Source of the DNA: Ophelia neglecta
Taxonomy: Eukaryota
Direction of reading: 5' to 3'
NCBI GenBank assembly: GCA_965285935.1
Contig: OZ260664.1
Coordinates: forward strand, 78,740,001 to 78,804,000
DNA length: 64,000 bases
Below the pieces are notes generated by a model. It had not been told where the DNA came from. It was given only the letters and a program-made list of their open reading frames with translations, and searched no databases. The position numbers and the translations under genes are program-made. Of the stretch, positions 6,001-44,175 are shown piece by piece. The stretch's first letter is position 1; every line of letters begins with the position of its first letter.

Positions 6001-9000
6001 ATGAGCAAACGAGTCTGGGAATCTTATCTGATTTATGATGTCATTAAAGAAAATGTATGACATTTATAAGTTTATAAATTTGTTTATTCATTTGGCTCAT
6101 ACGTTTCATGAGAATGAATATTAAAATAGTGGTATATTGTGCCATTATATCCTGTCCCATTAATATGAAATTTTGATTCCTGGCTTCAAGTGGTGCCTAT
6201 GATTCCAGCTGCCTTTTATTATTTTGTGTTCGCATTGGGATACTCAGTTTTTATTATTATATTGATGGACAGAAATGCAAGTGGGTGTCATGTTATGTAA
6301 ACAGGCTGGACATCCTTTTCAGAGGAATTAAGTCATGTTATCAGAGTATTATAATATGTACATGTATGATGTGGATAGTAATCTGCTTACTTGGTGGCGG
6401 GCGACTCTGATCCAGTCCAGATATTATTAAAACATCAGCGTCAGTGTTCAAGGAGGAATATGGGGAGGGGGGGGGGGAGGGGGGGAACTAATCTACTCAC
6501 ATGGTGCTACTCCCCAATCCCCCATATAGACACTTCAGTAGGCAGTTCTGTCATTACAGTATTCCTGTCATTAAGAGGACTATAGTTGGTGATTATCACG
6601 TCTGTAATTTGGCATTCATCCTGCCCACATATTCAGCCGGCTTCTCTTACAATCTTGTTTGGAGGATTAGGCCAGATGGAGGTCAAGACATTATGTGGTT
6701 ATCATGCATTCGCATTCTCCCCCTCATTGGATTAGCTTGGCTTCCGAGAAACCTGAAAACCAGTGAGTAATGTCAACCCACAGAGCAGAAATAATGCTTG
6801 CTGGTAAAATGTTAGTAAACAATGATTTCTCAATATAAAATATATAAAATAAATAAATAAATAGAAATTGATAATTTTTTACAAATTTAATTAAAAACTG
6901 ATTTAAATCTGATGAATTACATTCAGTGAAGTGGAAGCAGGCCACATTAATGTTTATTAATATGGTATTGTAGACTCATCTTTCAGTGAGGTGACAAATA
7001 AGGATGAAGATTATTAACTTACTAGTATGTAAGTAGTTAACATTAACAGGATATGAAATGTGCAGATTTGGTTTGAGCCTGACAATAGATATCGGTATTT
7101 GGTAGGAATGTTTGTAACTCATGAATTTGCATCACATGCTTAATTTTCATTTACGAATAATAATTTTATTTAAACAACAGTGGAGCAGACATATACAGTG
7201 TTTGTCAACATGGTTAAAAAGGGATCATGGTAACATAAGGCTGTGTTACCATGATACTATCATACTTTCTGCATCAAATGAATTCCTGGAGGAATGTATG
7301 AACAAAGCAAGATTATTCTGCTGTGTTTGAAGACATTAATTTAAGTGATCAAGATTTTGCCAGATTTATGTACCTATAGGTATCCCTAAGAAAAGGGCTC
7401 AATAGAATTCTGTGAAACTGTATATGTGTAGCCACCATTTTAATATCATACATGCATATAATATGCGTCTTACTATGATCAATTCAACAAGGTGAATCTT
7501 GAGAGATTTGAAGATATTTTTTATGATGAAGGGAGTATATTGAAATGGTTGATAGTCTTACATATATATAAGCTGCATACACAGTGCATATGTACACTTT
7601 TGCACATATGTGTAGTACATACAAACAAGCTCTTCAGAACTCTTTCCCTTATATTCAATTTTTTTGCAGTCTACATATAAAGAACATTATTTTCATCCAA
7701 ATATTTTTTAAATTCATTTTTCAATCCATTACAGTATAACTTGGAAGATAGAATTGAAGCCCTTGGTGGAGAGAAAATCCAATCCATAATTTACATTTTT
7801 GGTTTTGGCATTTTGACCTTTGGAAGTGTCCTTGACATTTGCCTCTCTCATGGTCTGCCAGTCTGTGGACAATTACATTAGGTTTATTTGCAGTTTACAG
7901 GGGAATTTATTGATAAAAATTCATCATATAAATAAAATTATTTGTAGGAAGGTACCATCTTATATCATTGTGTGTACTTATTTGATTTGAGATTTTAAGG
8001 CCTTTTTTATAACTAAATAAACCTTGAATGCTTTTGAACATTTGATCAAGACAAATAATGGACAATAATGCATGAAAATCATGAAAATATGCCAGCAACT
8101 ATGTAGTCCTGTGCACTCAAGGGTGCAGGGATGCGTATGATTTTTAAAATATGATGAATTGCCGTCGGTTTTGTCCTACTCCAGTGTGGCGCCAAGTTGA
8201 CAGGTCTCATCACAGGCAGTGCCGCTGTATAAAACCTGGTGACTGATTGCGGCGGCCTTGCTGAGGACTTCTCCGGCAGGTCATGTCATGGTGCAAAAAG
8301 GCCTCTAGCTCCCCAAGCGTGTTCTAGGCAAGGCACTTAACTACAATAATGAGTCTGGTTCTTACCCCCTGGCTTACTGACTCAATAGGCAGTCATTAGG
8401 AGCAGCCTTTTTTCCTGTTTCTTCTTGCTATGCAAGTTGGTAAGCTAATGGTTGCTCAATTGGCCATACTAGCGCAACTGTTGGCTGCTTGTTTCCTGAT
8501 ACGTAGGCTATTTGGACATGTATTTATATAAAAAAATTGCTATTCCTTTAGCTAAAAAGAAGCAAAAACATTGGTATTTATCAGAAAAAGAAGATAACTA
8601 TAAGTCCAACATTCCCCAAGACTTTCTACTGAAGCAACCTTACATAATATATTATATAGGGCAACACTTGATGCTTCAATCAGTCAGTAGGGTGTAGCTA
8701 ACTTAAAGATGGTCATTCATTCTTTGTGCAATGCTATAAATGTATGTGTAGACAATTGTGTCAAATTCTGGAAGGAGTGAGGGGGGGGGGGGGCTCCTTG
8801 GTAATGGATATTGCCTCAGCTGATTGGTCTCTGTCTAGAGTGAATCCAGTACTCATTTCAAGACACAAGCCACCAATCCAGCGATCACATTTATAGTAAT
8901 AAGGTTATGGAGAGCAGAGCAGGATTTAGGCATCAATGTGACAGACAAGAGACAAGCCAGAAATATTAACTCCACACATTCTGTCCCATTCAATTCTATA

Positions 9001-12000
9001 TTAATAATCAAGTTGTCAAAAAGTGAAGAGCCAGCAAGCTAAGGTAAATCCTGTCCAATAGATACAAAATGTAGGTTAGCTAGTTTATTCAATAAGTTAA
9101 TAGATTATGTTGCTTTATTCAGCTTCATCTCTTAAAATCACACATGGGGTGCAATCTTGGCCCAATGCATGAGCCATGGCATCATATTTTTAAAGTGTAT
9201 TTCTCTTATGACTAAATATCAGTTGAGCCCAAGGCAATTGGAGACCAGGTCACTGCTGTTTTAGTACAGGAATGTTATTTACCTGTTACTGGTGGTTAGA
9301 ACGTATGATAATTCTTGAAGGTGCCTTTAGGGTATATAATAGAGTGGACAAGAATCACGGCGGCCCTGCTCTCTTGTTCTCGCTAATGGACTGAACTACT
9401 GACTAGGGAGACATCCAGCAGACTATTAACCATCGTAAATCAAGACCGACCAGAGCTATGGCCGTGCCAATTTTCTACTCAACTGGACTTGTCTCCGTCG
9501 GGTGTAAGCCCGATCAATATCACAAGTCAAACATAGACATTAGATGTGCTGTGTGGCACTATGGTACCATCGGGGCCCTGCATGGTCAGTAGGGGATCCC
9601 TGGATGAAGTGGAGAGGGGTTTAAAGGGTTGTTCAAGGGGGTCCAAGGGAATGCAGTTCCCTATAGCTCCTACACCCTTCTTTATCACAGGGTTGTGATG
9701 AACTTTGAACGGGGGAATATATAAAACATTTCCTAAATGAGAAGACTAACAATGAGTCTGTGCCTAGTTTTTCTCCTCTTCTGTCCCCTCCTCCCAGAGA
9801 CAATGGGTCTAAGTGTCTACAACATTCTAGTGTCTGGCTGGAAATCACTGGGACATTGGATGTGGAGTGATAAGTTGGACATACAGCATGGCTAAAATCT
9901 CTCAAGAAAACTCAGCCACAGGTTTATTATCCCAGGTCAGATTAGGGGAAATTGTGTAGGTAAACCTGTACTATTATAAGTTCAAATATAGAGGTCCACG
10001 GTCAATTTGGTATCCGAAATACTTAATTAATTAATCATATTTACCGGTCATACTTTATCTCAATTGGGGTTTTGTCGACAGACTGGTTTGTCACTGAGTT
10101 TCTTTCAGAAGCTTCCGGATCCCAAGGAATTACTCTCTCTTTATTGGTCAGATCTGTCTTGTTAGTACGGTCCCGGAAAAGAATTATGCATAAGAGCTTC
10201 CTGGTAATCCAGAATTATTAGAGCTTTTCAGCATGTTAGCCCCTGAGAGTAGTAGTCTGAGTGCTGCGATATATTCAGATGCATTGACTCCTGCAATAAG
10301 TACCGAGCTTACGCCTCTGAATGTCTGATTGGGTGGTTGAAGAATGTCGGTATAGAGGAGAAGGACTGCACAGAATTTATTGTGTGGTCATCTTCTTTGA
10401 ACCTAATCTCCAATCAATGAATAATTAAAGTGAAGTTCATATGATGTCTTTGAAATAATCAAATGGCCAGACATCTGTGGACGGTCCCCTAGAAAAGACT
10501 GGTAAAAGGACAAAATGATAGAATGTCTGTAAAATGGCACTGATCACTTAACTGGCAATATTGAAATATAAAAAGTTAGATATAAAACCTTTCTCAGATA
10601 TTGGAGGGGCAAATATACATTACCTGATTAATGTCTTTTTTGTACATATTGATTCTTCCACAATTCTCACTCAGTTTGATGGTTGCAATATGTTTTCCTG
10701 TTTTGACAAATAAGATTGTATATTATGAGTTTGTTACTCTTCCCATGCTTGCAATTTATTTTGGATATCAGCTGATGCATTCTGAGTTATACTCTTGAGC
10801 ATGTACTTGATATAAAGAAGCCTAATGCATAGCCAATAAATGCCCCCCCTCCTCCCCCCCCCCCCAAATTATTAACTGGCCTCAGAACACTGTATTCTGG
10901 CCCTAAATGAGTAAGCTCCATGAAGGTTCTGTTATTGTAACATGTGGGCTTGGATTGTCCCGTCTGTTTTCTAGCCGTTTAAGGGAAGGATTCAAGGACT
11001 AGATAGATGAGGAGCGTCCAGGAAGACAGTGTCTAGGGAGCAGCCCTTATACCCCATCAGTTTTTGATGAAGCTCAGCACATGAAGTCATCGAAGAGGTG
11101 CAATTGTGAAATAATAAGAGACAGTCAGTGTTTTTCTCCCTGCCCCAATCCCATTTAATGTCTGAGATGCCGTCTGCTGAACCACAGTTTGAGCCACTCA
11201 TTACGAAACTTCACAAGTTAGAGTAATCCTGGCAGAGTTTTTGTTGTTTTAATGGCGCTAGTCGGCTTGTTTCATGTTGCCTGCTGACAGGTTGAGTTGA
11301 ATAAATCAGTTGTAGAGGCTTTTAAATTTGCCCTGATCATCCATTCCTTAAGCCAACCTAAACAGGTTGAAAAATAACTTCTCAGACAGTGCACAGCCTG
11401 CTAATCTTAGAGATCAGACAATAGATGTTAAAGACCAGGTGAAAAAACTATAACTAAGGCTTAGAAGAAAAGAATAACAAAGTCTGGCCAAAAAAGACAT
11501 TTTGTAGGTAATTGAGAGTGAATACATTTTAATATTATGTGATTTAAGAGACCTGTTTGGTGACCAAGAGCAAGGTATGCATTATTTTTGGTCTAAGGTA
11601 TCAACTTATTGAAGCCACTGACCAGTTCAGCCACTAATGTAACAGTAGGTGTTCCTTAAACTTTTCATGTAAATTGGTATCCACAGATTTCCCATATTAG
11701 TTTTTTCATGCTCAGAATGACATCCAAGGATGTATTATCTAGGTCAAGGTTTTCAAACTCACCTGCTTCAATGCTTTAACAAGTATCACCTAATTAATAT
11801 CGGCAGATAGTTCCTTCCTTAATTATAAGCCAGCCTTGGTCTTGTCCATTCCTACCAATGGAGACCAACAGGGATTTGTCTGTGGCTGGTTTAAGACCAC
11901 TGTAAAATCAATGAGACCAAACTATGCATCATAACAGTTGTGGCCGAGAATGCAAATTCTGTCACCCAGCCTGGAAGTGCCAAGATAATCGCTAATGGTA

Positions 12001-12587: not shown

Positions 12588-13700
12588 TTTATTATTTATT
12601 ATTATTATTTATTCAATTTATTTAGCGCTTTTTCCAGAGTCAACTGTTCAAAAGTGCTTTACATAAAAATATTTTCCATCACACACAAGACCCAACTACA
12701 TAGTTGAAATAAAGTATAAGCATTATATTACACATAAATCTAAACTCCAAAGTTAAAATAAAAAGACAAGTAAGAAATATCATATTTAGAATATAAAAAA
12801 CTATACTAAAACAAATTAGACTGAATTTAAAAATTATGGGAATGCAATTCTAAAAAAATGTGTTTTGAGTGCCCTCTTAAAACAATCTAATGTATTACAG
12901 CACCTTATATCTGCAGGTAGACTGTTCCATAATTTAGGGGCAGCAACTGAGAAACGTCTCCGGCCATATGTGGACGTTTTATATTATGGCACTACCAATA
13001 AATGTTGGCCCTCAGATCTGAGAGATCGGTTTGGCACATACGGAAAAATGAGATGCTTGAGATATAGGGGGGCCAGATCATGCAGACATTTATAAACAAA
13101 AAGACATACTTTAAAATGGATTGGCTGCCTAACGGGTTACCTATGTAGTTTGGCCAGGAGTGGGGTGACATGGCAACTGTATGAAGAAGTTGTCACCATA
13201 CGAGCAGCTGAGTTCTGCACACGCTGCAATTTCTCCACAAGTACATCAGGCAGCCCTACATAGAGCGAAATTCAAATTGTCTATTCTTGAAGTTATAAAG
13301 GCATGACTGTGTAATAGTCAAAAGGGCATCTCAAGTAAAATACTTTTTGATTCTGGATAAATTTTTCAGATGCTGAAAAGCTGATTTACATGCCAGGTCA
13401 GTCTGAACTTCCAATGATCTGTTGGCTTGAAAAATTGCACCAATATTACGTGCTGTCAGAGAAGACTCTATTACGGATTGACCAATCTTTACTTCCGCTA
13501 CAGAGTTCAGGTCTGTCTCGAACCTAGACTTTTAACACCAAAAACTCAGTTTTCTCATCATTTAGCTTCAAGATGCTCCCTGCCATCCAATTGCGCACAT
13601 CAGCAATGCACTTCTCCAAGTCATCTCTTACAGTGACTACATTTGGGGCCTTAAAAAAGGCATACAGTTGCGAAACATTGGCATAAAAATGATAGTACAT
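12588..13700 (-). mobile_element. Degraded 5'-truncated LINE (L2/CR1 group), ORF2 C-terminal part plus 3' tail
   Basis: Minus-strand translation gives a degenerate RT motif (YHFYANVSQLY, cf. YADDxQLY) near 13700, then LPDVLVEKLQRVQNSAARMV...HVTPLLAKLH...FSVAAPKLWNSLPADIRCCNTLDCFKRALKTHFF, with stops and frameshifts. A (TAA)n/AATAAA-rich tail lies at about 12588-12630. Confidence 0.85.
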
Positions 13701-19700: not shown

Positions 19701-21339
19701 AAATAAGGGAATCTACTAACAGGCTAGATGATATCTGGAGGTCAGTTGGAGGGGAAAGGGATCATCCAATGTTTATCTTCCAATTTTTATCATACTACTG
19801 ATTCTGCATACTATAAATTAATTAACAGTTAATACTTACTTCTGTACAACATGCAACTAAGTTCTGATTGTTACCTGATGAGGGGTGTAACCATGCACTT
19901 TAAATATGTAGAAACTTGTAAATTACTTCTTCTAGTACTCATCAATCAACATGGATTACCTTGAAAGTTTCTCTCTAATTTATGGTAATTCCGGAGTTAA
20001 AAAATCTATATTCCTGCTAAGAGCCAAAGCAGACAAATCATTTGACACATCTCTTGACAAATTAGCTGTCAGTAAGAATGTCACATTTTGATTTCTATAC
20101 AAAAATTGTTAACTTTAAGAAATAGCATTATCATGCTTGGAGAATCATTGCAATTATTTTCAATCAGCATTTTCAAGATTTGTTATGACTTGTTATGCCA
20201 TCAAAGCAGTTCTGGCATTATCCTACAGCCTAGGGCCCTAGTTTCTGTTATATTAATTCAATTGATGGATGTTCCAGCACTTCATAATTGAGTACTTTTA
20301 TTAAAGGAAACCCATCATAATTGGGGGGGGGGGATTAGGAAGCTATTGAGTAGAGTCAGAAATATGGGCCTCTTTGTAAATGGTTGATTGATTACTTTTA
20401 TCAGGTGAATTTGAGCATCTATGGGAAAATGAAACACTTTGTTTGCTGATTTGGACAGAAAAACTGTGAAGCTTTTGAAATGTTCCTATGCAGGTTTTTG
20501 ATTGGCTTCTTAACAGATGGCTGTAACATATAGCTGCAACACATCTATTATAGTGGCAACCACTCATAGTGGTAGGTTTTGTCCATGAAGTCCTATTTCT
20601 CTAGGAGAGAATGTACCTGTGTACATGATAGATCAAGGTAGTATTATAAACAAAGGGAGCCTGCTCATGTACATGTACTTGACTGCCTTGGAGGCTAGTG
20701 ATCTGGACAAGTAAACCACCAGCTGAAAGCCTGAACTTAATACAGATAAATTACCCCAGCATTAGACCACACCTGCTCAGGATTGACCCCCGAGGTTCTG
20801 AAAGGCTACAACTTTGTTAGTTTCTTTCAAATCAACCAAAAATGTCAATAATTAAGTCAGCCTAGAAATGCCCTTTTATTACCTAACTACCTGTTGTCCA
20901 TATATAGTGGCCACTTGTCCGGTAAAACACCTCTTTTGTAAGAATTCAGCAGACATCTCTCTTGGCTTTGATAATTGACCTTTTCTTTAGGGAAATTTTT
21001 GAATGTTCATCTTTGGTCCTGTAGTCTAGTTGGGCTTGACTTTTGTACTAATGGGTTCTTTAATTGTCGTCTGCTCCCATTGATTACTCAGCAGCCATCA
21101 TTCTAATTAATTTAAGAATGTGTGCAAAGCCTTGAGTGTTTGCCGTGTAGTCTAGACTGAGGTGGGATAAGGCATGCAAGCAAAGTTCAATGACTGCAGC
21201 TCTTGCATTGGAAATCAAATTTGTTAAGGCCCCTCAAACTTTTTGTTGTTTTTTCCTAAATTAAATAACATGTGCTGACCTCTGCATACATAAAAAGTAC
21301 TTCACATGTAATCAAATTGTTTCTTTTGTACAATTTCAG

Positions 21340-21515
21340 GAAGAGGAAATAGAAAAGAGAAAAAGTGAAATGATGAACTCGTCGCGGATGGAAGCGGAAG
21401 TGAAGGAGTTAAGGAAAGAGAATCATGAGCTCAAACAGTACATCCTGGCTCTTCAGGGGGAGGTCTACGGGGCACGGCTGGCAGCAAAATACCTGGACAA
21501 GGAACTCGCCGGAAG
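21340..21515 (+). CDS. GOPC: GOPC coding exon (second coiled-coil region)
   Basis: Acceptor tttcag at 21334-21339 and donor GTAGGT at 21516. Translation [58 protein letters not shown](R) matches the GOPC motif EAEVKxLRKEN...[22 protein letters not shown]. Confidence 0.95.
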
Positions 21516-21949
21516 GTAGGTCAATCATGAGTTCAAACAGTACATTCCGGCTCTTCAGGGGGAGGTCTACGGGGCAGGACTGGCAGCAAAATACCTGGAC
21601 AAGGAACTCGCTGGAAGGTAGGTCAATCATGAGTTCAAACAGTACATCCTGGCTCTTCAGGGGGAGGTCTACGGGGCAGGACTGGCAGCAAAATACCTGG
21701 ACAAGGAACTCGCCGGAAGGTAGGTCAATCATGAGTTCAAACAGTACATCCTGGCTCTTCAGGGGGAGGTCTACGGGGCAGGACTGGCAGCAAAATACCT
21801 GGACAAGGAACTGGTCGGAAGGTAGGTCAATCATGAGCCCAAACAGTACATCCTGGCTCTTCAGGGGGAGGTCTACGGGGCAGGACTGGCAGCAAAATAC
21901 CTGGACAAGGAACTGGTCGGAAGGTAGGTCAAACATGAGTTCAAACAGT
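21421..21949 (+). repeat. 102-bp tandem repeat (5 copies + partial) made of the last 95 nt of the GOPC exon plus 7 nt of the donor site
   Basis: Units start at 21421, 21523, 21625, 21727 and 21829, with a partial at 21931. Each full unit ends ggaag|gtaggtc. Confidence 0.97.
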
Positions 21950-24900
21950 TCAAACCCTTCCTGACAGACACTAACACTACGGTAATATATAGCCCCATCC
22001 TGACCCTTATTCTATTTGTAATCAGTGGATTGAGCTTATTGTGTCCAGAATTTACTGTATACAAATTAACCAAAGCTATTAAACCTCCTTTGTACACAGA
22101 TCATGCAAATTTTACAAACGTAAATAAAGTCTAATCAAAACATATATTGCTTCCAGCCATCTATATATAGAAGGTATAACAAGCTCTCTCGTGTTCAAGG
22201 ACAACTTAGAGGCTTTGGCAGCAGTAGAATTTCATTGCTGGATAAGCTCGCAGAAATCGCATAGACCTGGTAAAGAATAAGTTGATAACTAGGTTAGCCT
22301 CTTGTATTAAAGGACCCCCAATTGTGGACCCGTACAGTTTTAACTATTGTCTGAATATTAGCCAACTTTTGCACTTCCGGATGTGGAGTGGTTTCTTCAC
22401 AAGTTTCGTGATTGCCAAACAGGGAGCAATATGTCAACCGGGGGAATGAGGTCATTACCACTGCTCACTACCATGACTACTCTGGCTTCCTGTGATAACA
22501 CAATGCTTTGGATATGCAGCCCGTTTCTATAAATTAAAGTACTTTGGTTATAGTGCAGGCTGAATGGCAAAACTAACAGATCCCCTGGAGAGTGTTTAAG
22601 AATAGATGGGTCTATAGTTTTCCTGCTGAATTTACAGTTGAAAATGTAATCAGTGGTGCTGTAAAAATGACCACATTGAGACTTGTAAATCTTCTATTTT
22701 TTTTGGAAAAAAAAACGAAATTACTTTCCTATTTTCTTTCCAAATAATTCACTTTTCTCCCAGCTGATTCAGTTTTACATGGACATGGGGCATAATCATC
22801 ACTCAATGGTTGGGTAATACGCTGTGAAGAAGAACAAGAGTGCTCTTGACGGTGAAGCTTGTCCTATTAGCAGAGCTGATGGAAAAAAAGGCAGCCCTAA
22901 TAAGAATATGAATCATAGAGTCTTTATCCTGCCCACCATGGCCTTGGAATAATACCAACTCTCCAGGATATCCAAAATGCTATTTTTTCTGCTCTCCACA
23001 ATTAAGATAACCCAAGCCATCATGGCTATAATCCTTGCTATGCCATTCCTTAAAGGGGTAATTTGCTTCAAAGCAGACAGGCTGAAATCTGATCACTTCC
23101 TACCATACAGGGAACCATTATCGATGCTCTGCTGGGTCAGATCCTTTCTTTAATATATTAAAATGGATGAGGGTAAACAGTCTTATCTTGCCCGAAAAAA
23201 AAGAACAGTGATTTTTGAAGCCTCACTAACGGTGTTAATATTTTCAACAGGGAATTCCAGCTTTATCGGTCAGTGGAACACTTCCAGTTCCTTCCAGTTT
23301 CCAAACTCCTTGTTGTGTCCATCATGGATTGCCGACCCGTCTAAGAACTGTTGCCTGAACCATCTCTAGTTGACTAGAAAACACACATTTCCTTCAAATA
23401 TTTGTGGAATACTGGTGTCCCCTAAGGAGGTTAATAAGACAGCCAGCTAGACTGTGATTGAAGACCTTGAGTTAGATGTCCTTGTGTTTGACAGCCTTTG
23501 CCTGGCTTTCTGGGTTCACTGCACACAGCTTTGGGCATTGGATTTACACCGCTTTTTATTCAGCAAATTCAGGATTTATTGAACAGGGTGCTAATTTCAA
23601 TCGCATTAATTCTACATCCTCAATTAATTCCTAATTTGAAGGCAGGGAGGTGGATGACGATTTGTTTCATTTCATGCCAGAATGGAATAATTGTATTTTT
23701 GTCTTATTTCAAAGTAGACTCTTGACATTCCAGTTGTCTTATTCAAACCTGGCAAGAATAAGAATTCAATTTATAAGATACTTGTGCATACATTACCCAA
23801 GTTAAGGGATAACTCTGGATCAAAGTTTTACAAATCTGACTGGCCAAAAGACCATGAGATATGTCTAGTAGTCCCCACCTGATAGCCTAGGTCTAAGGTC
23901 TCTGTGAGATATATCAGACTTCAGTTACTGAGAGTATAGACTAGCTTATACATCTGAATGACCACAAACACCAATAGGTTCTGTCTTATCTAAATAAAAG
24001 GAACTGATACACAGAAAATAATAAGGGACTCTGCATGGAATTAGTTAAATCATTAAAAAAAAAGTACAATAATATTACTTTGTGTATCAAACTAATCCTT
24101 TATTTATATTTTGACATTAAGGAAGACCACTGACCAAAGTTAGTACATTAGATTAATTATTATTATGATTTCTATGAACTTTAAGGCAGCCCATACTGTG
24201 TGTTTTGAACATTGAATTAGTTACTCCTGTTTATCTGGAAATATTTGTATTTTAATCAATGGATTGTCCCATCAAACTACATGTGTAGGTACTCCATCCC
24301 AAAGCTTAATTCTTCCACTCTCATTCACTAGAGCATTTCTCTCTCCCCATGTCCCCATGGAGACCTGTATCTCCCAAACACTGACTTTACAAGGCAGAAC
24401 ATAGTGTATGACAACGCTGGTTTGACAGTACATGTACTACTATGTATATATATAAATATAACTATGTCCTGTACTCTGTGTAAAATGACATACACATCCT
24501 TCCGCCACTAAAGTGCAGATTCCCCAAGCAGTGAATGGAGAAGTAGTGGAGTGTAGTGACAGGTGATAGGAGAATCTTTCTGTAAAGAAAGGCCCGTGTG
24601 TTATTGATGGTGTGTTTACTACCTCCTCACAATGGTAGAACCCTGGATATAGATATGGTTGACAGAACACACATACTTCTTCACTTGTCCCCAGATATGG
24701 GTTGGTAAATGAGGTTAATGACTCTGAGTCACATGGTCTCTATCACAGTAAATATTTAGGCCTACATTCTTAACTGGGCAAGTAGTATGTCGGTTTGAAT
24801 TCTTGCCACTAACATATGATTAAACAGGTATTTGGTAAATTATGCAGGATTGGCTGGCAGGGCAGGTGGTGGTCTCTGAAGGGTGACTGCCTAGACAGCT

Positions 24901-25723
24901 ACTTACCTGTTATAACTTAAATGTTGTTAGTTGGCCGGCGCTAATCAGACCATGAATAAAGCCAAGGTATGCTTTGAATTAGATGTAAATCTACATGTAC
25001 CTGTCTGAACTGGTGAATCTTTTACGATGCATTATATAATGAATATATAGTAAAAAACCATGTATCAACAAAACTTAATATTTGTCGCTCTCATTATCCA
25101 TTAAGATTATAAATATATAATTTGAGTGCACTGCCTAGCTATATAAGAATTGAAATTTAAAAAAAAATTGTCCATGTTCTGAATATAGGTTTAATAAGTA
25201 GCTCTTATAAGAAGTAGTGTACTTACAAGTCCATGTATGGTGGTAAACAAAATAGTTGTACTACTATGTGTAATAGTCTTCTCGACATTATAAATACATC
25301 AGAATGAGGTTCGCTTTGATATGCTGTTTATATATACCATATATAGGTATGCTTTGAATGTTGAAAATGTCATCATGTTAAAACTTACAGTGCAAGATAG
25401 GCATATCAGATATATTTAAGAATTTTAGGAAATTGTATACAAGGAATCCAGTGGTGACATCCAATCTCATCATGGGTCGTTTTTAAGGTCACATGGAGAC
25501 TCAGCACTTTTTTGCTAGTCTTGACTAGCTAATGGTGCAAGACAGGGGTTGTTCTACAGTCAGAGTCAAGTATGGCCAGAATCCGGTTATGTCCATGCTT
25601 AAAATTCCTTTGAAATTCTTACATCATTTTAGTATGTAAAAGGGCTTGGACTTGTAAACGCAGTGTTGTGTGGTATAAGTTGATTATATATCAAATTGAT
25701 TTAAGAATGTCCTTATTTTCCAG

Positions 25724-25889
25724 GATTCAGCAGATCCAATTGTTGGGTCGGGACATGAAGGGTGCTGAACATGATAAGCTGTGGAACCAACTGGAGGCTG
25801 AGATACACCTCCATCGCCACAAGACTGTGATACGGGCCTGTAGAGGGCGCACCTCGCGCAGAAAGAAACAGGCCATCCCGCCTGGACAC
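25724..25889 (+). CDS. GOPC: GOPC coding exon
   Basis: Acceptor ttttccag and donor GTATGT. (R)[55 protein letters not shown]; the phase joins the previous exon (AG+G = Arg). Confidence 0.96.
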
Positions 25890-26188
25890 GTATGTCATAC
25901 TACTTATTGCTACCAGTGTGGCTGACGTTTACTGCTGAGAAAATGTATTATAAGTGTATTAATCATCATATAAATTTGAATAGATAACTATTATCAGATT
26001 TGTACAGTCAGGAAATATATAATATGAATGATTTTTAATAGAGCAAAGAAGGTAATAATCCGTTTTAGTTGAATGTTTAAATTGTTTGGTTGCCGACAAC
26101 TGCTTCATTGTAATTTGATTTGCCCTCACCAGGCCATCTTGAATGGCTCTCTGTAGAGAATGTTCTGGTAATAGACATCTTTTTACAG

Positions 26189-26284
26189 GATTTTAATTCA
26201 TTAAAAAGAAGGCAGGGGGTCGGAGACATCAGAAAAGTACAGTTACATAAAGGTCCGGAGGAAGGGTTAGGAATGTCTATAACC
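26189..26284 (+). CDS. GOPC: GOPC coding exon (PDZ N-terminal part)
   Basis: Acceptor ttttacag and donor GTGAGT. DFNSLKRRQGVGDIRKVQLHKGPEEGLGMSIT contains the PDZ carboxylate-binding loop (GLGMSI). Confidence 0.95.
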
Positions 26285-26689
26285 GTGAGTAGTATGATAC
26301 GGGAATTGTTGTCATAATATTTGCCATACTACTAGGGATTCACTATGAATTAATTCGTTTTTCGGAGGAATAATGTTATGTTTGCCTTTTCTGTCACAAT
26401 ATATTGGCAAGCCTTGAAGTTTGCTCATTTTAACAGAGTCTGTCTGCAATGGAGAGGAAGTTGTGGGTATTGTTCTGTGAGAAGTTTTGTTTCCAAGCAT
26501 TAAAAATCCTTTTCTCATTGAAAGATTTTTGTTAACGAGGCCTTCTATCAAACCAAAAAATTGTCATGTTCTGTTGGTTGTTGTGTAATATGTGTTCTTA
26601 ATCTAATGACAGATTGTTGTACCTTTTTTTCTTAATGTCATTTAAAAGTCCTCAAGTGATTTGGAGAAAATTGTATTTGCTGCTTGCAG

Positions 26690-26854
26690 GGTGGTAAAGA
26701 ACATGGAGTTCCGATACTGATATCTGAGATACACGAGGGTCAGCCGGCAGACCGGTGTCGAGGTCTCTACATAGGGGACGCCATTCTGTCTGTCAATGGA
26801 ACAGATCTGCGCAACGCCAAACATGCTGAGGCTGTACAAATACTCTCCCAACAG
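26690..26854 (+). CDS. GOPC: GOPC coding exon (PDZ core)
   Basis: Acceptor ttgcag and donor [61 protein letters not shown]. Confidence 0.97.
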
Positions 26855-26929
26855 GTAGGAAAAGACTGGTTTAAGTAATGTACATCTACATACTTGTCCC
26901 TCAAACAGATAAAATCATTAAAAAAAAAA

Positions 26930-27920
26930 GCAGGTAAGGAGACACTTCCAAAGATAAACTACTACCCACAGGTAGGGAAATGTCCTAAACTAACATACTC
27001 TTCTATGCACTTCTTACATGTAGGGAGGAATAAAAATAATACATATATACAGGTATGGAAGAATAGAAATAATACACTCCACTATCAGGTAGGGAAGAAC
27101 AAAAAATAATACACTCTACTAACTGGGAGGGAAGAATGAAAATAATACACTCCACTCCCTGTAATAATACACTCCACTAACAGGTAGGGAAGAGTAAAAA
27201 TAATACACTCCACTAACAGGTAGGGAGGAATAAAATAATACACTCCACTAACAGGAAGAAAAAACTAAAAATAATACACTCCACTCCCTGTAATAATACA
27301 CTCCACTAACAGGTAGGGAAGAATAAAAATAATACGTCCCACTAACAGGTAGGGAAGAATCAGATAATACACTCCACTAACAGGTAGGGAAGAATGAAAA
27401 TAATACACTCCACTCCCTGTAATAATACACTCCACTAACAGGTAGGGAAGAATAAGAATAATACACTCCACTCACAGGTAGAGAAGAATCAGATAATTTG
27501 TCCCACTAACAGGTAGGGAAAAATAAAAAAAACTCTACTAATAGGTAGGGAAGAATAAGATAATACACCCCACTAACAGGTAGGGAAGAATATAAATAAT
27601 ACACTCCACTCCCTGTAATAATACACTCCACTAACAGGTAGGGAGGGATGAAAATAATACACTCCACTAAAAGGTAGGGAAGAGTTAAAACAATACACTC
27701 CACTAACAGGGAAGAATAAGATGATTCACTCCCCTAACAGGTAGGGAAGAATAAAATGATACACTCCACTAACAGGTAGGGAAGAATAAAAATAATACAC
27801 TCCACTAACAGGAAGGGAAGAATAAAAATAGTACAATCCAATAGCAGGAAGGGAAAAATCATACTCAACTTACAAGTAGGGAATAATAAAAATCATAACT
27901 CCATTTATTTGTAGGAAAAA
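26930..27920 (+). repeat. ~36-bp minisatellite (aataatacactccactaacaggtagggaagaataaa) with an interspersed 22-bp variant (aataatacactccactccctgt)
   Basis: Directly visible array. The core is homogeneous at about 27060-27830 and both edges are degenerate. Confidence 0.93.
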
Positions 27921-28640
27921 GTGTAGGGTTGCTAAATGTAACATTATTTTCAAAGAGTATGTGGTGATATGACCAGATAAGTGTAGAAAGCCACGTAAAT
28001 CCCAAAGAACTAACAAACCAACCAAACCACAAGGGGCATCTTTTAGTGAGCTGAGAAAATATAATTGAAAGAGAAAATTAAACTGCTGTTCATAGTCACT
28101 TGGGTGTCGTGGTGGGACCTTAATATTTAAAAAATGGTTGATGGAGACCTCAAATCGATGCCAGCACTCACAAGAACCTAAGTGCTTTTTTAAAGCCTTC
28201 TAAATAGGCAAAATCATTTTTAGTGTTCATGCAGTTGACCCTTTAAATGTACCTCTTATACTGATTCTGGAAATATATTTCCAATCATATGTTCTAGAAA
28301 ACAATTTTTTTGTTTTTCTCCTTCATTGGTGAACTGCCTTATAATTGTAGCTTTAATTTATCTAATATTATATTAAATTCTTAAGATTATCGGCCATTAA
28401 GAAGCCAGTACATCATTGTGTTATAGAATAGAATAAATGTATTTTACGATTAATCAGCCTCACCCTTTGCCTCTTTAAACAAATACATGAACACTGAAAC
28501 AGAAGAAATGATTATATGACGATTATATTAATATAAAAGGGATCTTCTGAGTTACTTCCCGGTGGAGCTAGTACCTAGTCTTCTATTTCTGATATGCCAA
28601 TGACAGCCAGTATTTCTTTTTTCTTTTTCTTTTTTTACAG

Positions 28641-28732
28641 CAAGGCGACATTCAATTAGAAGTGGTGTTTGTAGCCCCCGACGAAGACAGCGATGATGAA
28701 AATCACGAGTATGAAGACGAAAATGGTTTTAG
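28641..28732 (+). CDS. GOPC: GOPC coding exon (PDZ end + acidic segment)
   Basis: Long polypyrimidine tract + tacag acceptor; donor [36 protein letters not shown](R) resembles vertebrate [30 protein letters not shown]. Confidence 0.93.
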
Positions 28733-28958
28733 GTCTGTAACATTGTTTGTGCTGTTTTACTCCTTAGAAGTGCCAATACTCTACACTTCAAAGGTTATTT
28801 GTATGATAATTGATTAAAGAAAAAATTATGCCTTGAATACTAGCTTGATTTTCTCCATACAATACTTTATATTTGGTCTTTGATGCACATGTAAAATAAC
28901 AGTTTTGTTGATATTGTTTACTAATACCAGTAGTATGTTATCTTGTCTCTCTGTGTAG

Positions 28959-29153
28959 ATATAAGATTTACGACGAGGATGTGGTGAGTGACACCAGTGG
29001 CAGCAGTCACATGAGCACGTCACAGCAGAATGGCAGTGCAGAAACCCAGGCACTACTACCCAACGGACCAAACTCTGTGGCCCCACACGCTGCTGAACAT
29101 TCCCTCGATCAAAAAATGCTTGGTCACCTTCTTGAAACAGTGTCTCCCTCTAG
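28959..29153 (+). CDS. GOPC: GOPC coding exon (C-terminal tail)
   Basis: Acceptor tctctctgtgtag and donor GTGAGG. Open frame (R)YKIYDEDVVSDTSGSSHMSTSQQNGSAETQALLPNGPNSVAPHAAEHSLDQKMLGHLLETVSPS, phase 2 at both ends. RYKIY resembles vertebrate RYRLY. Confidence 0.8.
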
Positions 29154-31240
29154 GTGAGGTTATCTTCAGCATTAGTGCTTTTGAATTGTATTGAGATATG
29201 TTTGACCAGCTGTATCGTGTGCATTCTGAGTTATATCATGTCAGATAAGAATGGTTCAAAATTTTGCACTATTTGATTTTTTCAATGTGTGTTTTTGTGG
29301 CACTTTTGGTGTAAACTAATTGACTTTATTTTTCATGAAATTGATCAGGAAACCAGTATTGAATTAGTATTGAGAAGCTGCATTCCTTTACTGTGACCGT
29401 TTATTAGTGGTATATAGATTTTGTGATGAAAATGATAGTTACAAGTTTAGAGAGCAGACACTTTTTTTTTGATATATGAAAATGGAATGAATTCTTTTGA
29501 TGATACATTTAATAGAAAATGATTTTTTGTGGGTCAAGTTTTATCGCTCATAAATTGAAATATCATGCTGGAGAATATTAAAACGAATTCATAGAAAAAC
29601 CCAACAGTGGTAGCTCATTTATCCTGATGATTTAAGGGTTTTATCACAATGGGCCAACCACTTCATTGCCCATATTCACCATGTTTGGCCAAGCTATAGT
29701 CAAATTTATTTTTGAATTCAAAATAGAGCCTTGTAGTCTATATTTGAGAACATTTGTGCAGATGTATTCATAGTAAAAACAAATTAGTTTCCCCCGTTTA
29801 GCAAAAAAATGTGAATATCACTTTTGTTGCCATAGCTCCAGATAGCCTTACAGGCTATAGCCTAAATTGTTTACTGCAAAGCCTATCTAAATAAGGTAGT
29901 GAAAATAGCTGAGATGGTATAATAATGTTAACATGGATGTTACTTGTCTATGTAAATGCAAATTGATGGCTAAAAGTAGATTATGAATTGATTCCATGAT
30001 CCCTCCAATATGTTGTGTCACATTATCTGAAAGCTAGGAATTGGAAAACAAAAAAAAAGGAGGGTGATTAACTCCATCATTGAATTGGCTTCAAAAAAGA
30101 CTATTATCTTGAATGGCGAAATCATAGATGCTTTTGAGTTGAGTGTCAGGGAAATATCTGCTATTGTTAGATGCCCAGTTTTAAAGCCAAAGCGAGTGGG
30201 TGATGGTTTGAGGTCATTTTTTATATTATCAAGTCAGCTGATAGAAATAATTACTAATATTTTATAAAACATTTTATGTATACATTGTAACAAACTGAAT
30301 TGGGGAAAGTAGTGAGGATGTTTGCCCATTAAACATGTACAGTATGTGCATGCATGCTTATTGTATAATCTGATGATAGATGAGTTTTAAAATCAAAAGA
30401 TAAGTCATACCCCCACTTAAAGACTTCCTTCCCGCCCCAAGATTATCATTTGGGATGAAATTTAGTCAGTAGGTCTTTTCACATGACAAACATTAACATG
30501 GCCTTCATGAGGAGCATATGTATAGCAGCTTTGGGGGCAGGCCTCGTTTAGAACTAAATTATGTTCAATCTTATCAATTTATCCCATTTTTCGTAAAAAG
30601 TCAAGAGAAAGTGCCTGCAAAAGGACATTAAAAAGGCTTCAATGGGTGTGCCAAGTGTGATATGCCCTTAGGGGTTCCCTGAGGTGATAACACTGAAAAT
30701 TTAAATAAATTAAAAATAAAACTGTTGCTCTTAATTTAATTTAAAACATATATGTTGGTTTCACCTAACACCGACTAAAATCACAAAGTAGTCGATTGCA
30801 CCTGTCATATTCTGTCAAATAGGTCTCTTAAATGCACCTTTAATATCTACAGATTGTACATTTCCCTACTCACAAAGATATATAGATTAATTTGAAAGTT
30901 CTCATCCCATTCCACCAATTATTTTTTAAATTGAGCTATAAAATTTGCTCACCAAGTCTGTGTCTTTTTAATATATTTTCTGATATATAGGGGCAGACCC
31001 ATTTGGGATCTTAGCCCTACACCACCAGGGGGTCCTACTCTACCCCCCTTTAAAGAGGTCCTTGCACCCCTTAGTTTATAAAAGGGGTCATCTCACAAGT
31101 AGGGTGTGGGAGGACACATTAAATTCCCCTCCCATGTCCTCTGAGCTGGCCCCTTTTTCCTCACTTTCTCATTCAATCCTGATATGAATTATTTGTGTGT
31201 CGTTCTAACATTAATCTGTTGATGCCTTACCTTTTTCTAG

Positions 31241-40696: not shown

Positions 40697-41319
40697 TTCT
40701 TTCTTTCTACCAATACTACAAATCCTCATACTTGAGGGCTCCTTGTAGGGTGCGCACGCTGGAAATAAATTAGTAATAAGACACAGACAAGTGTTCAGTA
40801 AAGGAAACCTAGAGCGGTAGTGCAGTGGAAACCAAAACTCAGAATAAGGGAAGATAAGTATATACAGGTTAAAATCAGGGGTTCAGTTTAGAATACGCAC
40901 TGACCCTGCAGATGACCCCTGAAGGCCTCCACTGTCTGTGCTTGGACAGCGAGTGAGGGTAGGGAGTTCCACCGAACCACCGTTCTGGGGAAGAACAGAG
41001 AGCTGTATGACAGCGTGGTGCAGGGTACTTGCAGAAAACTGTACTCATGGCTGTGTCTTGTTGGCCTTATAACAGGCTGTATATACTGGTATGGGTTGAC
41101 TGCCACAATACCATGGACCATATTAAACAAGAACACAAGCCGAGCATGACATCTGCGCTGTTCTAGAGTGTGCCACTCCAGTTGCTGCAACATTGAAGTA
41201 ACACTGGAGGTATTGTGGTAACGGTTTAACACCCAGCGTGCAGCCCTACGCTGTACCCTCTCCAATTTATACTTGTTCCCCTCAGTATAGGGGTCCCAGA
41301 TCGCACTTCCATACTCAAG
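40697..41319 (-). mobile_element. 5'-truncated LINE (CR1/L2/Daphne-like group), ORF2 C-terminus + 3'UTR + (GAAA)n tail
   Basis: Uninterrupted frame LEYGSAIWDPY...KLERVQRRAARWV...SSVTSMLQQLEW..LEQRR...FFPRTVVRWNSLP, typical of the post-RT region of non-LTR ORF2. The stop is at 40888 and the tail at about 40697-40710. Confidence 0.9.
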
Positions 41320-41694
41320 AATTGCGACCTGTAGCTCGAGCCGAATGATTTTGAAAGGCAAAATCGTACGTAAGCACGTAAATACGGGCACGTCAACATA
41401 CATACATTATTTAAGCCTACCACAAATGAAGATCAGTTCATATGCAATTCATTCTATCATACATTATTATTCTAGGTTTCAATACACCATCATGCGTGCT
41501 TGCCAATCCAACAAAAAAACTAATGTTTATCATATTCATATATTGAAAACGAAAGTAGCTTAATAACGTTTTGGACGTGCAGCTATTTATGTTGTTTTTC
41601 CTTTCTTAAAAGTATATACAGCATGATTTCTCTGTATTCGCGCTAAATAAAACACATCTGTGTCAAACCTATTCTCTAGTCGACAAAACAGTAT

Positions 41695-44175
41695 TAAAAG
41701 GGCAAAATTTGAAATTTCAACTTTCACTGAAAATTGGCAAAATCACTCGGCACGAGCTACAAGGTCGCAATTCTTGCACGATCACCTTCAGATTTTCACA
41801 GTGTGTGTGGTCGGGGTCCACATTAGTCGGCACGAGCTACAGGTCGCAATTCTTGTCCGATCACCTTCAAATTTTCCCACAGTGTGTGGGGTCGCGATCC
41901 ACATAAGTGGGTATTTTTGGTGATTGTACCTACCGGAAGTCGCGAGTCATCTGGGAAAATGCGTTTTTGATGGACCGGTTGGCGCCAAATCGCGATGAGC
42001 CGTCACACAGGAAAATCGCAGGTGCCATTCTGTCAGGTACAAAAATGTCAAAAAACGCTAGAGGTGGTTTGGTTTCGTCCGTTTGGCGCTCAGAAGCTTG
42101 GTTTTCGAGATATGGCCCAAATCTCGTTTCAACTCTCGTGGCCCGTATCTCGCTTAATAATAGAGTTAGAGACTTGAATTTTTTTAACCGATTCTTTTGG
42201 ACCCTCCTTTTGTTTGGTCGCCAAATATCCTATGCGCATGCGCAAAGTGCAAAATTTGAAATTTCGACTTTCACTGATAATTTCGCCGCTTTGGCATAAA
42301 TATATCAAGCAATCGAGAGAGTAGAAACCAGGTGGTCCCATAGATCAAAGGGTCTATAAAGATAGGTGTTGTAAGAAGTAAGATATATCATGTTAACTTA
42401 CCATGTATCATACAGCACACGTCCATATCAAGACACATCCATATCCTTCAGTGAAGTGTTACACACAAACAATACGAGTGACAGATGAAAATATAAATAA
42501 CATCTATCATACCGCATTATTCGGGGCGTATTTGCAGTTTCTCAAACTTCAAAGCTGCCACAAATATAGTGAAGATTTGGTAAAATACTCCAAACCTAAA
42601 TGTGAATGTAACCTTTCCTTTGGTCGCCCAAAATTGTATGCGCAAAGTGCAAAATTTGAAATTTCGACTTTCACTGAAACTTTGGCGGCTCACTCGCCAC
42701 GAAATACAGGTCGCAATTCTTGTCCGATCACCTTCAGATTTTTACACAGTGTGTGTGGTTTTGGTCCTCATAAGTGTGTAGTTTTTGGTGATTGTACCTA
42801 CCGGAAGTCGCGAGTCATCTGGGAAAATGCGTTTTTGAGGGTTTGGTAGGCGCCAAATCGCGATGAGGCGTCGCACAGCAAAATCGGTCTGTCAGGTATA
42901 AAAGAATCATGAAACGCTTGACCTTAGGGTTGGTTTCGTCCGTTTGGCGCTCAGAACCTTAGTTTTCGAGATATGGCCCAAATCTCGTTCCAACACTCGT
43001 GGCCCGTATCTCGTTAAAACAATAGAGTAAGAGACTTGGATTTTGTTTTAAACTGATTCTTTTAGACCCTCCTTTCGTTTGGTCGCCAAAAATCCTTTGC
43101 GCATGCGCAAAGTGCAAAATTTGAAATTTCGACTTTCACTAAAACTTTTGCCCCTTTGGCAAAATCACTCGATCGGCACAAGCTACAGGTCGCAGTTCTT
43201 GCCCGTTCACCTTCAGATCTCCACACAGTGTGTGTGGTCGGGGTCCACATAAGTGGGTAGTTTTTGGTGATTTTACCTATCGGAAGTCGCGAGTAATCTG
43301 AGAAAATGCGTTTTTGAGGTTTTGGTAGGCGCCAAATCGCGATGTATCTCGCTTAAGAATAGCGTTAGAGACTTGAATTTTTTTAAACTGATTCTTTTGG
43401 ACCCTCCTTTCCTTTGGTCGCCAAAAATTGTATGCGCAAAGTGCAAAATTTGATATTTCGACTTTCACTGAAACTTTGGCCGCTTTGGCAAAATCACTCG
43501 CCACGAGATACAGGTCGCAATTCTTGCCCGATCACCTTCAGATTTTCCCACAGTGTGTGTGGTCGCGATCCACATAAGTGGGTAGTTTTTGGTGATTGTA
43601 CTTAACGGAAGTCGCGAGTTATCTGGGAAAAAGTCGTTTTTGAGGGTTTTTGAGGGCTTTGTAGGCGCCAAATCGCGATGAGGCGTCGCACAGGAAAATC
43701 GCAGGAGTCATTCTGTCAGGTACAAAAAAGTCATGAATCGCTTTACCTCAAGAGTTGGTTTCGTCTGTTTGGCGCTCAGAAGCTTAGTTTTCGAGATATG
43801 GCCCAAGTCTCGTTTCAACTCTCGTGGCCCGTATCTCGCTTAATAATAGAGTTAGAGACTTGAATTTTTTTTAACTGATTCTATTAGACCCTCCTTTTTT
43901 TTGGTCGCCAAAATCGCATGCGTGAAGTGCAAAATTTGAAATGTCGACTTTCACTGAAAATTTCGCCGCTTTGGCAAAAATAAATCAAAATCAATCGAGA
44001 GAGTAGAAACTAGGTACTCCCATAGATCAAAGGGTCCATGAAGATAGGTGTTGTAAGGTAGATAAGATAAATCTGGGAAAAAGCGTTTTTGAGGGTCCGG
44101 TAGGCGCCAAATCGCGATGTGGTGTCGCACATGAATATCGCAGATGCCAATTTGTCAGGTAAAAAAAAGTCAAAA
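41695..44175 (+). repeat. Complex CpG-rich satellite / transposon-derived tandem array, full unit ~480 bp, about 6 full or deleted copies
   Basis: Anchor gcaaaatttga(a/t)at at about 41702, 42249, 42649, 43114, 43443 and 43929. Shared blocks include caggtcgcaattctt, ggcgccaaatcgcgatg, ttttcgagatatggccc and aactctcgtggcccgtatctcg. Confidence 0.9.

What the first reader, a model, noticed from the sequence alone, without database searches (positions are those of the whole stretch)
21421..27920. Two introns of the same gene each begin with a tandem array derived from their own exon-end/5' splice site
Seen: the intron after exon 21340-21515 starts with 4 extra copies of exon-end + GTAGGTC, and the intron after exon 26690-26854 starts with a ~1-kb minisatellite resembling its own junction. 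The two units differ in sequence and period (102 vs ~36 bp), so they arose independently, yet both span a donor and expanded only into the intron. Inference: there may be a recurrent process, either junction-focused duplication or selective survival, since only duplications straddling a donor leave the first copy and the mRNA intact. This process would seed intronic satellites from exons and create decoy-donor trains. They could be neutral intron-growth products or could tune splicing efficiency/NMD. I cannot tell from here whether this has been described for this taxon.
Basis: partly seen in the sequence, partly recalled or inferred. Interest (0 to 1): 0.8.

Follow-up and report, generated by a model that had tools for sequence, protein, structure and literature searches.

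The report
Splice-junction minisatellites ("mirages") in GOPC
Two introns of an animal's GOPC gene each carry a tandem array grown from a duplicated exon-end plus splice donor; the arrays are real and arose independently, but this kind of repeat is already known from human genes and from amphioxus ("mirages"), and nothing here requires a special mechanism.

Summary
The gene is a GOPC/PIST orthologue on the + strand. Array 1 (21421-21949) is 102 bp x 5.2 at 96% identity. Its unit is the last 95 nt of exon 21340-21515 plus GTAGGTC, giving five identical donors, each followed by an in-frame TAG.

Array 2 is a 36-bp minisatellite (27015-27903) with a 129-bp higher-order repeat. Decayed proto-units link it back to the donor at 26854/26855. 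That junction is the best match to the unit in the whole 64-kb window.

Both arrays are single-locus in the 762-Mb genome and are supported by read-derived contigs. They are absent from the closest orthologue found.

Recurrence is real. Two other species carry junction-anchored arrays at other GOPC junctions, one on an acceptor. I confirmed one further case in this genome, and a second looks alike. The scan had already noted about ten more such cases on other DNA of this genome.

An excess over random duplication is not shown: 2 of 9 orthologue arrays were anchored against 0.68 expected (P = 0.14).

The kind is known: human F7, IFI6, CBS, LMNB2 and PDGFA minisatellites, and amphioxus "mirages". 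No RNA data were available, so donor use is inferred. Verdict: new member of a known kind, modest interest.

The parts
21340..21515 (+). GOPC coiled-coil exon (exon A). It ends ...KYLDKELAG(R) in phase 2. Its last 95 nt form copy 1 of array 1.
   Evidence: Translation. Twelve orthologous exon ORFs end identically. AG/GT boundaries and the 176-nt length are kept in 7 species.
21421..21949 (+). Array 1: 102 bp x 5.2. Unit = 95 nt of exon end + GTAGGTC. Donor G at 21516 (authentic), then 21618, 21720, 21822 and 21924 (decoys). In-frame TAG at 21517-21519 and once per copy. Partial sixth copy at 21931-21949.
   Evidence: Copies 2-5 share three derived changes against copy 1, and copies 4-5 share two more, so there were at least three steps. 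Single locus in the genome. Depth is 3-5 fold in read-derived contigs.
21516..25723 (+). Intron A, 4208 bp. The orthologous intron is 1355 bp (440-1794) in L009.
25724..25889 (+). GOPC exon B ([14 protein letters not shown]...).
26189..26284 (+). GOPC exon C (start of the PDZ domain, ...EGLGMSIT).
26690..26854 (+). GOPC PDZ exon D, ending ...ILSQQ in phase 0. Authentic donor CAG|GTAGGA.
   Evidence: E = 4e-25 to the human GOPC PDZ structure 4e34. Pfam PDZ. Boundaries conserved.
26855..27048 (+). Decayed proto-units that link the donor to the regular array. Donor-like motifs at 26930, 26968 and 27016.
   Evidence: A read-derived contig spans 26834-27157 without a difference.
27049..27903 (+). 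Array 2: regular minisatellite of 36-bp units (about 18 nt like the exon end + CAG|GTAGGG...). Higher-order repeat of 129 bp (36+35+58) over 27049-27806. Of 22 units, 17 keep GT and 12 keep CAGGTAGG.
   Evidence: Single locus in the genome.
28641..28732 (+). GOPC exon E, the acceptor end of intron D (1786 bp here, 269 bp at 2835-3103 in L009).
28959..29153 (+). GOPC exon F. The 3' end is uncertain: either a donor at 29153/29154 or a TGA stop at 29155-29157.

Best explanation
Both arrays are boundary-spanning minisatellites of the kind called 'mirages' in amphioxus.

Origin (inferred from array structure). A local tandem duplication happened to include the last bases of an exon and its 5' splice site. 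The extra copy sat downstream of an intact first donor, so the mRNA was unchanged and the duplication was tolerated. The free copies then diverged and expanded by slippage or unequal exchange.

Array 1 took at least three steps. A founding copy acquired three substitutions and then grew to four copies. Array 2 is older. Early long units decayed, one 36-bp derivative was amplified, and a 129-bp higher-order unit formed later. Array 2 and its proto-units now make up about 1.05 kb of the 1.79-kb intron D.

Splicing (inferred, not shown). The first donor is the one used. Use of any decoy would bring a stop codon into the message.

No junction-specific mutational process is needed. These genomes are rich in minisatellites and the gene was compact, so a sizeable share of tolerated duplications span a junction by position alone.
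For: Anatomy and copy genealogy.

Coding constraint on copy 1 only: [30 protein letters not shown] is invariant in 12 relatives. Intronic copies carry L>F or L>P, R>G, and in some copies a further L>P or A>V.

Junction homology of array 2 beyond the donor consensus.

Not a dispersed element.

Reads.

Lineage-specific: L009 (93-97% identical exons) has the same junctions, short introns and no arrays.

Recurrence at other junctions:
- L011 has a 92-bp x 6 array on the acceptor of exon A.
- L012 has a 45-bp x about 26 array on the donor of exon C.
- In this genome, L048 has an 89-bp x 17.7 array on a conserved exon end.
- L049 has about 47-bp units behind a 137-codon first exon.

Uniform-placement null: each array has a 2-21% chance of spanning a junction. 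Observed 2 of 9, expected 0.68, P = 0.14.

Precedent for silent decoys and use of the first donor: PMC1557585. Amphioxus mirages do not disturb splicing: PMC3087553, PMC3902484.
Against: No RNA data, so use of donor 1 and silence of the decoys are inferred from conservation and precedent only.

The orthologue test is small. The point estimate is about a 3-fold excess, so a moderate enrichment is not excluded.

In the two long-unit arrays of this genome the intron share of the unit is only 5-7 nt (window array 1 and L048). Uniform breakpoints would give that rarely, about 2% each.

Two arrays in one gene has P of about 0.007 under the same null, although this gene was picked because of them.

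The three runs come from one sample, probably the assembly's own, so the read support is not independent.
Confidence: 0.8

Rival explanations
1. A junction-focused mutational process. Breaks or polymerase template switches would be favoured at splice sites, for example through transcription-linked pausing or R-loop edges. Tandem duplications would then start there more often than elsewhere.
For: Four junction-anchored arrays occur in 8 species' copies of one gene. There are many further first-reader notes in this genome. The 3' breakpoint sits at +5 to +7 of the donor in window array 1 and in L048. Matches to three spaced AGGTRAGT motifs outnumber the reversed-motif control about 7:1 genome-wide.
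Against: On independent orthologues the excess is not significant (P = 0.14). The 7:1 figure counts matches, not arrays, and is dominated by a dispersed 53-bp satellite and a few huge arrays. Other anchored arrays have breakpoints 18-37 nt into the intron. A rough genome estimate of anchored arrays lies within the neutral expectation (see the full report).
Confidence: 0.12
2. The decoy-donor trains are selected regulators. They would titrate U1 or divert a share of transcripts into NMD to set GOPC output.
For: Decoys are as complementary to U1 as the authentic sites (7 of 9 positions; read). Every decoy path contains a stop codon. In human IFI6 and CBS the first two pseudo-sites are used (PMC1557585).
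Against: The arrays are absent from the closest orthologue and from four further species' GOPC genes at these junctions. Units decay: 5 of 22 have lost GT and identity is 62-77%. Other species carry arrays at different junctions. No expression data exist.
Confidence: 0.05
3. Array 2 is an ordinary intronic minisatellite whose likeness to the exon end is coincidence, or one or both arrays are assembly artefacts.
For: Array 2 starts 160 bp from the donor. The unit carries a generic donor-like motif. No contig spans array 1 end to end.
Against: The junction is the best match in 128 kb of null sequence. The exon-only score is reached by 2 of 1424 AGGT sites. Proto-units bridge the gap, and U2 keeps the exon's ATACTCT. 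Read contigs bridge both array edges, and copy-specific variants and raised depth are present.
Confidence: 0.03

Closest known systems
Amphioxus 'mirages' (Adh3, globins BflGb6 and BflGb9, troponin C, PGBD5). Canestro et al. 2002 as cited in PMC3087553 and PMC3902484.
   Same: Minisatellite-like tandem duplications that span an exon-intron boundary. They occur at 5' or 3' boundaries, with units of 10-160 bp. Splice signals are reiterated and regular splicing is undisturbed. They are found in several genes of one genome. They show concerted evolution inside the array, with edge copies excluded from it.
   Different: The organism here is coded; it is probably not amphioxus, because contig C7 alone is 110 Mb. 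Array 2 is far more decayed and has a higher-order repeat. Somatic or allelic length instability was not tested here.
Human F7 intron 7 37-bp VNTR (Borensztajn et al. 2006, PMC1557585).
   Same: The first monomer spans the exon-intron boundary. The authentic donor is followed by identical pseudo-donors. The unit size is almost the same as in array 2.
   Different: In F7 only 4 nt of the unit are exonic, against 95 nt in array 1 and about 16 nt in array 2. [quoted passage not shown]
Human LMNB2 (100-bp monomer x 10-15) and PDGFA intron 4 (81-bp x 16-18) boundary minisatellites, as listed in PMC1557585.
   Same: Long units like array 1, and only the authentic donor is reported as used.
   Different: I know these only through the cited summary. 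No sequence comparison was made.
Human IFI6 (6-16) 12-nt and CBS intron 13 minisatellites, as listed in PMC1557585.
   Same: Reiterated donors at an exon end.
   Different: There the first two pseudo-sites are used constitutively and add in-frame or short inserts. Here every decoy path meets a stop codon.
Intron gain by tandem duplication of an AGGT-containing segment (Rogers model; Zhuo et al. 2007, 'introns from tandem arrays', cited papers).
   Same: Tandem duplication multiplies splice signals.
   Different: No new intron is created here. All five intron positions are conserved in 7 other species.

Membership tests
Boundary-spanning minisatellite / 'mirage' | Head-to-tail array with a unit of about 10 bp or more | tested here: met
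   102 bp x 5.2 and 36 bp x about 25.
Boundary-spanning minisatellite / 'mirage' | A terminal unit spans an exon-intron boundary, so the splice site is reiterated | tested here: met
   Array 1 meets this exactly. Array 2 meets it through decayed proto-units plus significant homology of the exon end to the unit.
Boundary-spanning minisatellite / 'mirage' | The exon is older than the array (the unit is derived from the gene, not the reverse) | tested here: met
   Exon ends and junctions are conserved in 7 other species and down to human GOPC, and the arrays are absent from L009.
Boundary-spanning minisatellite / 'mirage' | The authentic outermost splice site is used and the mature mRNA is unchanged | not testable with these tools
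   No RNA run holds the stretch. This is inferred from coding constraint on copy 1 only.
Boundary-spanning minisatellite / 'mirage' | Length instability or polymorphism | tested here: inconclusive
   One 'goes back 72' joint in array 2 in one run. Contigs with 31-letter words cannot size arrays.
Dispersed, transposon-borne satellite | The same unit occurs at many loci | tested here: not met
   Both units match only their own locus in 762 Mb.
Intron gain by tandem duplication (Rogers model) | An intron at a lineage-specific position bounded by duplicated AGGT | tested here: not met
   Exon lengths of 176/166/96/165/92 nt and AG/GT boundaries are identical in all loci where each exon could be mapped.

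The most novel reading that the evidence does not exclude
Splice junctions in this genome, and in related marine animals, may be true hotspots for the birth of minisatellites. One duplication breakpoint would be set by the splice site itself. The evidence is that the intron share of the unit is only 5-7 nt in two long-unit arrays. Mirages would then be a transcription- or splicing-linked mutational signature and a steady source of intron growth, not a by-product of uniform duplication.
Probability: 0.12. Interest if true: 0.7.

Novelty: new member of a known kind. Interest (0 to 1): 0.35.

Why it matters
These arrays show how an intron can grow several-fold from its own junction. Intron D is 269 bp in the closest relative found and 1786 bp here, of which about 1.05 kb is array 2 and its proto-units.

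They also place trains of full-strength decoy donors directly behind a real one. That makes them natural test pieces for how the spliceosome picks the first of many identical sites.

This genome seems to hold many of them, on both donors and acceptors. With annotation and RNA data it could finally test whether 'mirages' exceed neutral expectation, which the amphioxus papers left open. For annotation they are also a practical trap: the 102-bp (34-codon) array yields spurious ORFs of 175 and 179 codons.

Tried and rejected
1. Genome-wide pattern test. I searched for three AGGTRAGT motifs at minisatellite spacing against the reversed motif. Matches were 2690 against 386, and 2262 against 313. The counts are matches, not arrays, and are dominated by a dispersed 53-bp satellite and a few giant arrays. 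One 'control' array itself carries CAG|GTGAGT. I rejected this as a test of enrichment.

2. Random sampling of the genome to get array density failed.

3. Upstream GOPC exons were not found, either by tblastx against five orthologous loci or by motif search. The analysis is therefore limited to exons A-F.

4. Three of the twelve contig look-ups returned no DNA. L015 turned out to be a second haplotig of L013 and was not counted.

5. Pfam gave nothing for the L048 and L049 exons. L048 was then confirmed by the word search.

6. The organism could not be named. Run names are coded, and the accession of one relative is in no held paper.

7. Canestro et al. 2002 is not held and is cited second-hand.

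8. The big representative-protein search was not used. The protein's identity was never in doubt.

Full report
THE GENE

The + strand of 21340-29153 carries six exons of a GOPC/PIST orthologue. The PDZ exon 26690-26854 matches the solved human GOPC PDZ domain at E = 4e-25, with 55 of 55 residues aligned, and it hits Pfam PDZ. The neighbouring exons read [14 protein letters not shown]...[15 protein letters not shown] and ...[20 protein letters not shown].

I mapped the exons as 21340-21515, 25724-25889, 26189-26284, 26690-26854, 28641-28732 and 28959-29153. All have AG/GT boundaries. The lengths 176/166/96/165/92 nt recur exactly in every one of seven other species' loci where each exon could be mapped. 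Exons were searched one at a time by reference, and I did not build a joined protein. Upstream exons were not found.

ARRAY 1

TRF gives 21421-21949, period 102, 5.2 copies, 96% matches. In register, copy 1 is the last 95 nt of the exon plus GTAGGTC. Copies 2-5 are intronic, and a 19-nt partial sixth copy follows. All five donors read GGAAG|GTAGGTC. Reading through any of them gives AGG TAG in frame.

Copies 2-5 share three changes against copy 1: C>T at unit position 10, and CGG>GGA at positions 55-57. Copies 4 and 5 share two more, copy 2 has three private changes, and copy 5 has two private ones. Adjacent copies are the most alike. The history therefore had at least three steps: a founding duplication, then divergence, then local expansion.

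The stretch [30 protein letters not shown] is invariant in twelve orthologous exon ORFs. Copy 1 keeps it. Every intronic copy has 2-3 replacements in it: L>F or L>P and R>G in all four, plus a further L>P in copy 2 and A>V in copies 4 and 5. Only copy 1 is under coding constraint. This is the sequence-level argument that donor 1 is the working donor.

ARRAY 2

TRF gives 27015-27903 with periods 35/36, 58 and 129. Anchoring on ACAG|GTAGGGAAG shows spacings of 36, 35 and 58 bp that repeat as a 129-bp higher-order unit. Of 22 regular units, 17 keep GT and 12 keep CAGGTAGG.

The array does not touch the donor. Between 26855 and 27048 lie decayed units with donor-like motifs at 26930, 26968 and 27016. 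One of them still carries the exon's ATACTCT, where the later units have ATACACT.

The junction 26838-26862 aligns to the unit as AATACTCTCC-C-AACAGGTAGGAAA against AATACACTCCACTAACAGGTAGGGAA. It is the highest-scoring place in the window on both strands outside the array (score 28 against a null maximum of 24 in 25,068 windows). With the intron half removed, the 18 exonic bases score 17, which 2 of 1424 AGGT sites in about 215 kb reach. Without the shared CAG, 1 of 384 sites reaches the real score.

The exon end encodes ILSQQ, as in human GOPC, so the exon is the parent and the unit is the offspring.

ARE THE ARRAYS REAL AND LOCAL?

Each unit matches only its own locus in the 762-Mb assembly, so neither is a dispersed element.

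Three runs of one sample hold the stretch as contigs. Pieces without a single difference bridge 26834-27157 (exon D into array 2) and 21886-22127 (last copy of array 1 into unique intron). Summed word depth is 73-112 inside array 1 against about 23 beside it. This argues against an assembly artefact. The sample is probably the one that was assembled, and contigs of 31-letter words cannot size the arrays. No RNA run was found, so no splicing claim is shown.

RELATIVES

A word search with exon A returned 241 exon-sized ORFs. Contig look-ups gave usable loci for seven species.

The closest is L009, with exons 93-97% identical in protein. It has the same junctions, introns of 1355 and 269 bp where the window has 4208 and 1786 bp, and no arrays. 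Both window arrays are therefore lineage-specific. Array 2 and its proto-units (about 1.05 kb) account for most of the size difference of intron D.

Two other species carry arrays at other junctions of the same gene. L011 has a 92-bp x 6.0 array at 99% identity, with older 117-bp copies upstream. Its unit is the intron end, the acceptor and the first 54 nt of exon A, and the last copy is the real exon. L012 has a 45-bp unit made of the last 23 nt of exon C plus GTAAGT and about 16 more intron bases. It is present as 2.7 copies at the junction and 23 more behind a 186-bp insertion. So the outcome recurs, and it is not specific to donors.

IS THERE AN EXCESS OVER CHANCE?

For each locus I collapsed the arrays to one unit. 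I then asked how often a founding segment of that length, placed uniformly but not wholly inside an exon, would span a junction. The chance per array is 2-21%.

In the seven species that were not picked for their arrays, 9 arrays of period 20 or more lie in or next to the gene. Two are anchored, 0.68 were expected, and the Poisson-binomial P is 0.14. For the window itself the two chances are 0.144 and 0.051 (product 0.007), but this gene was chosen because of its arrays.

A rough genome-level estimate follows, and it is inference only. First readers noted at least 16 such arrays in 186 windows, about 12 Mb, or about 1.3 per Mb. Arrays of period 20 or more run at about 94 per Mb in the window and about 146 per Mb in the relatives' loci. 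I assumed about 4.7e-4 junctions per bp, which rests on an assumed gene count, and units of about 60 bp. Under those assumptions about 3% of founding duplications span a junction, giving 3-4 per Mb. The observed density does not exceed that.

OTHER CASES IN THIS GENOME

I checked two earlier notes. In L048 (C7:47,664,000-47,673,999) an exon at 5464-5606 is followed by an 89-bp x 17.7 array at 96% identity. Its unit is the last 84 nt of the exon plus GTAAG. Eight exon-sized ORFs from other assemblies share ...IQNRYKLNKKYRKL...AQAK and end at the same point. It is a conserved exon and a third verified case.

In L049 a 137-codon ORF beginning MGSQLSS... ends at CACACTG|GTAAGA. A 2.4-kb array of about 47-bp units with a higher-order repeat follows it. 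This case is plausible but was not confirmed by homology.

AN ODDITY

In the two long-unit arrays the intron contributes only the bare donor consensus: 7 nt in window array 1, and 5 or 6 nt in L048. Keeping donor 1 intact needs about 6 nt, but nothing in the neutral model puts the breakpoint at that minimum. Under uniform breakpoints each case has a chance of about 2%. The other four anchored arrays have intron shares of 18-38 nt, so this is not a rule. I record it as unexplained, and it is the basis of the novel case.

WHAT IS KNOWN

[quoted passage not shown] It lists F7 IVS7 (37 bp), IFI6/6-16, CBS IVS13, LMNB2 (100 bp) and PDGFA intron 4 (81 bp). It shows with 50 constructs that the F7 pseudo-sites are functional but that the most upstream site is always chosen.

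PMC3087553 describes 'mirages' in amphioxus globin genes, at both 5' and 3' boundaries. It cites Adh3 (Canestro et al. 2002) and other loci, notes that splicing is not disturbed, and notes that the mechanism of origin is unclear. PMC3902484 adds troponin C and PGBD5.

The window's arrays meet every structural feature of this class. The splicing and instability features could not be tested.

VERDICT

The finding is a new member of a known kind. Its main value is as a lead that this genome is rich in such arrays and could settle whether they exceed neutral expectation.

Noticed in passing
window 21409-21936 (-) and 21425-21964 (+): Because 102 bp equals 34 codons, array 1 yields stop-free ORFs of 175 and 179 codons in two wrong frames. 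These are a trap for gene callers.
   Followed up: no
L017-L046 (G000 C1: 0.63-1.77 Mb and elsewhere): A dispersed 53-bp satellite family with a perfect GAG|GTAAGT motif in every unit occurs at many loci, and an 84-bp relative lies at C1:48.82 Mb. It dominates genome-wide counts of spaced donor motifs. Whether it began as a junction array is unknown.
   Followed up: partly
L012 16044-16229: A 186-bp insertion splits the 45-bp junction array in this relative. Its ends look like short inverted repeats (cagggctttcccc ... ggggaaaacactg), as in a small MITE.
   Followed up: no
L011 11137-12172: A 1-kb (TATA)n microsatellite lies in the orthologous intron A. A separate 113-bp x 3.3 array lies at 8810-9181, upstream of the acceptor array.
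   Followed up: no
window 21300-27299: Contigs of the three runs differ from the window at about 59 places in 6 kb and by a 19-bp insertion at 26055. The implied allelic diversity is about 1%.
   Followed up: no
window 40888-41403 (-) and 13524-13700 (-): These are fragments of non-LTR retrotransposon reverse-transcriptase ORFs. Tandem pieces lie at 41747-41908 (79 bp x 2.0) beside the first.
   Followed up: no
window 60695-61159 (+): An ORF holding a protein-kinase N-terminal motif (LLGRTLGEGSFAKVKEA) is probably the first coding exon of a neighbouring kinase gene.
   Followed up: no
window 21455-21515 and each copy of array 1: Each unit also holds an acceptor-like tcctggctcttcag|G, 59 nt before its donor. 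The decoy copies could therefore in principle be spliced as 59-nt frame-shifting pseudo-exons (read).
   Followed up: no
L013 and L015: Two contigs of one ENA assembly carry the same GOPC structure with slightly different intron lengths. They are most likely two haplotigs, so I counted them once.
   Followed up: partly
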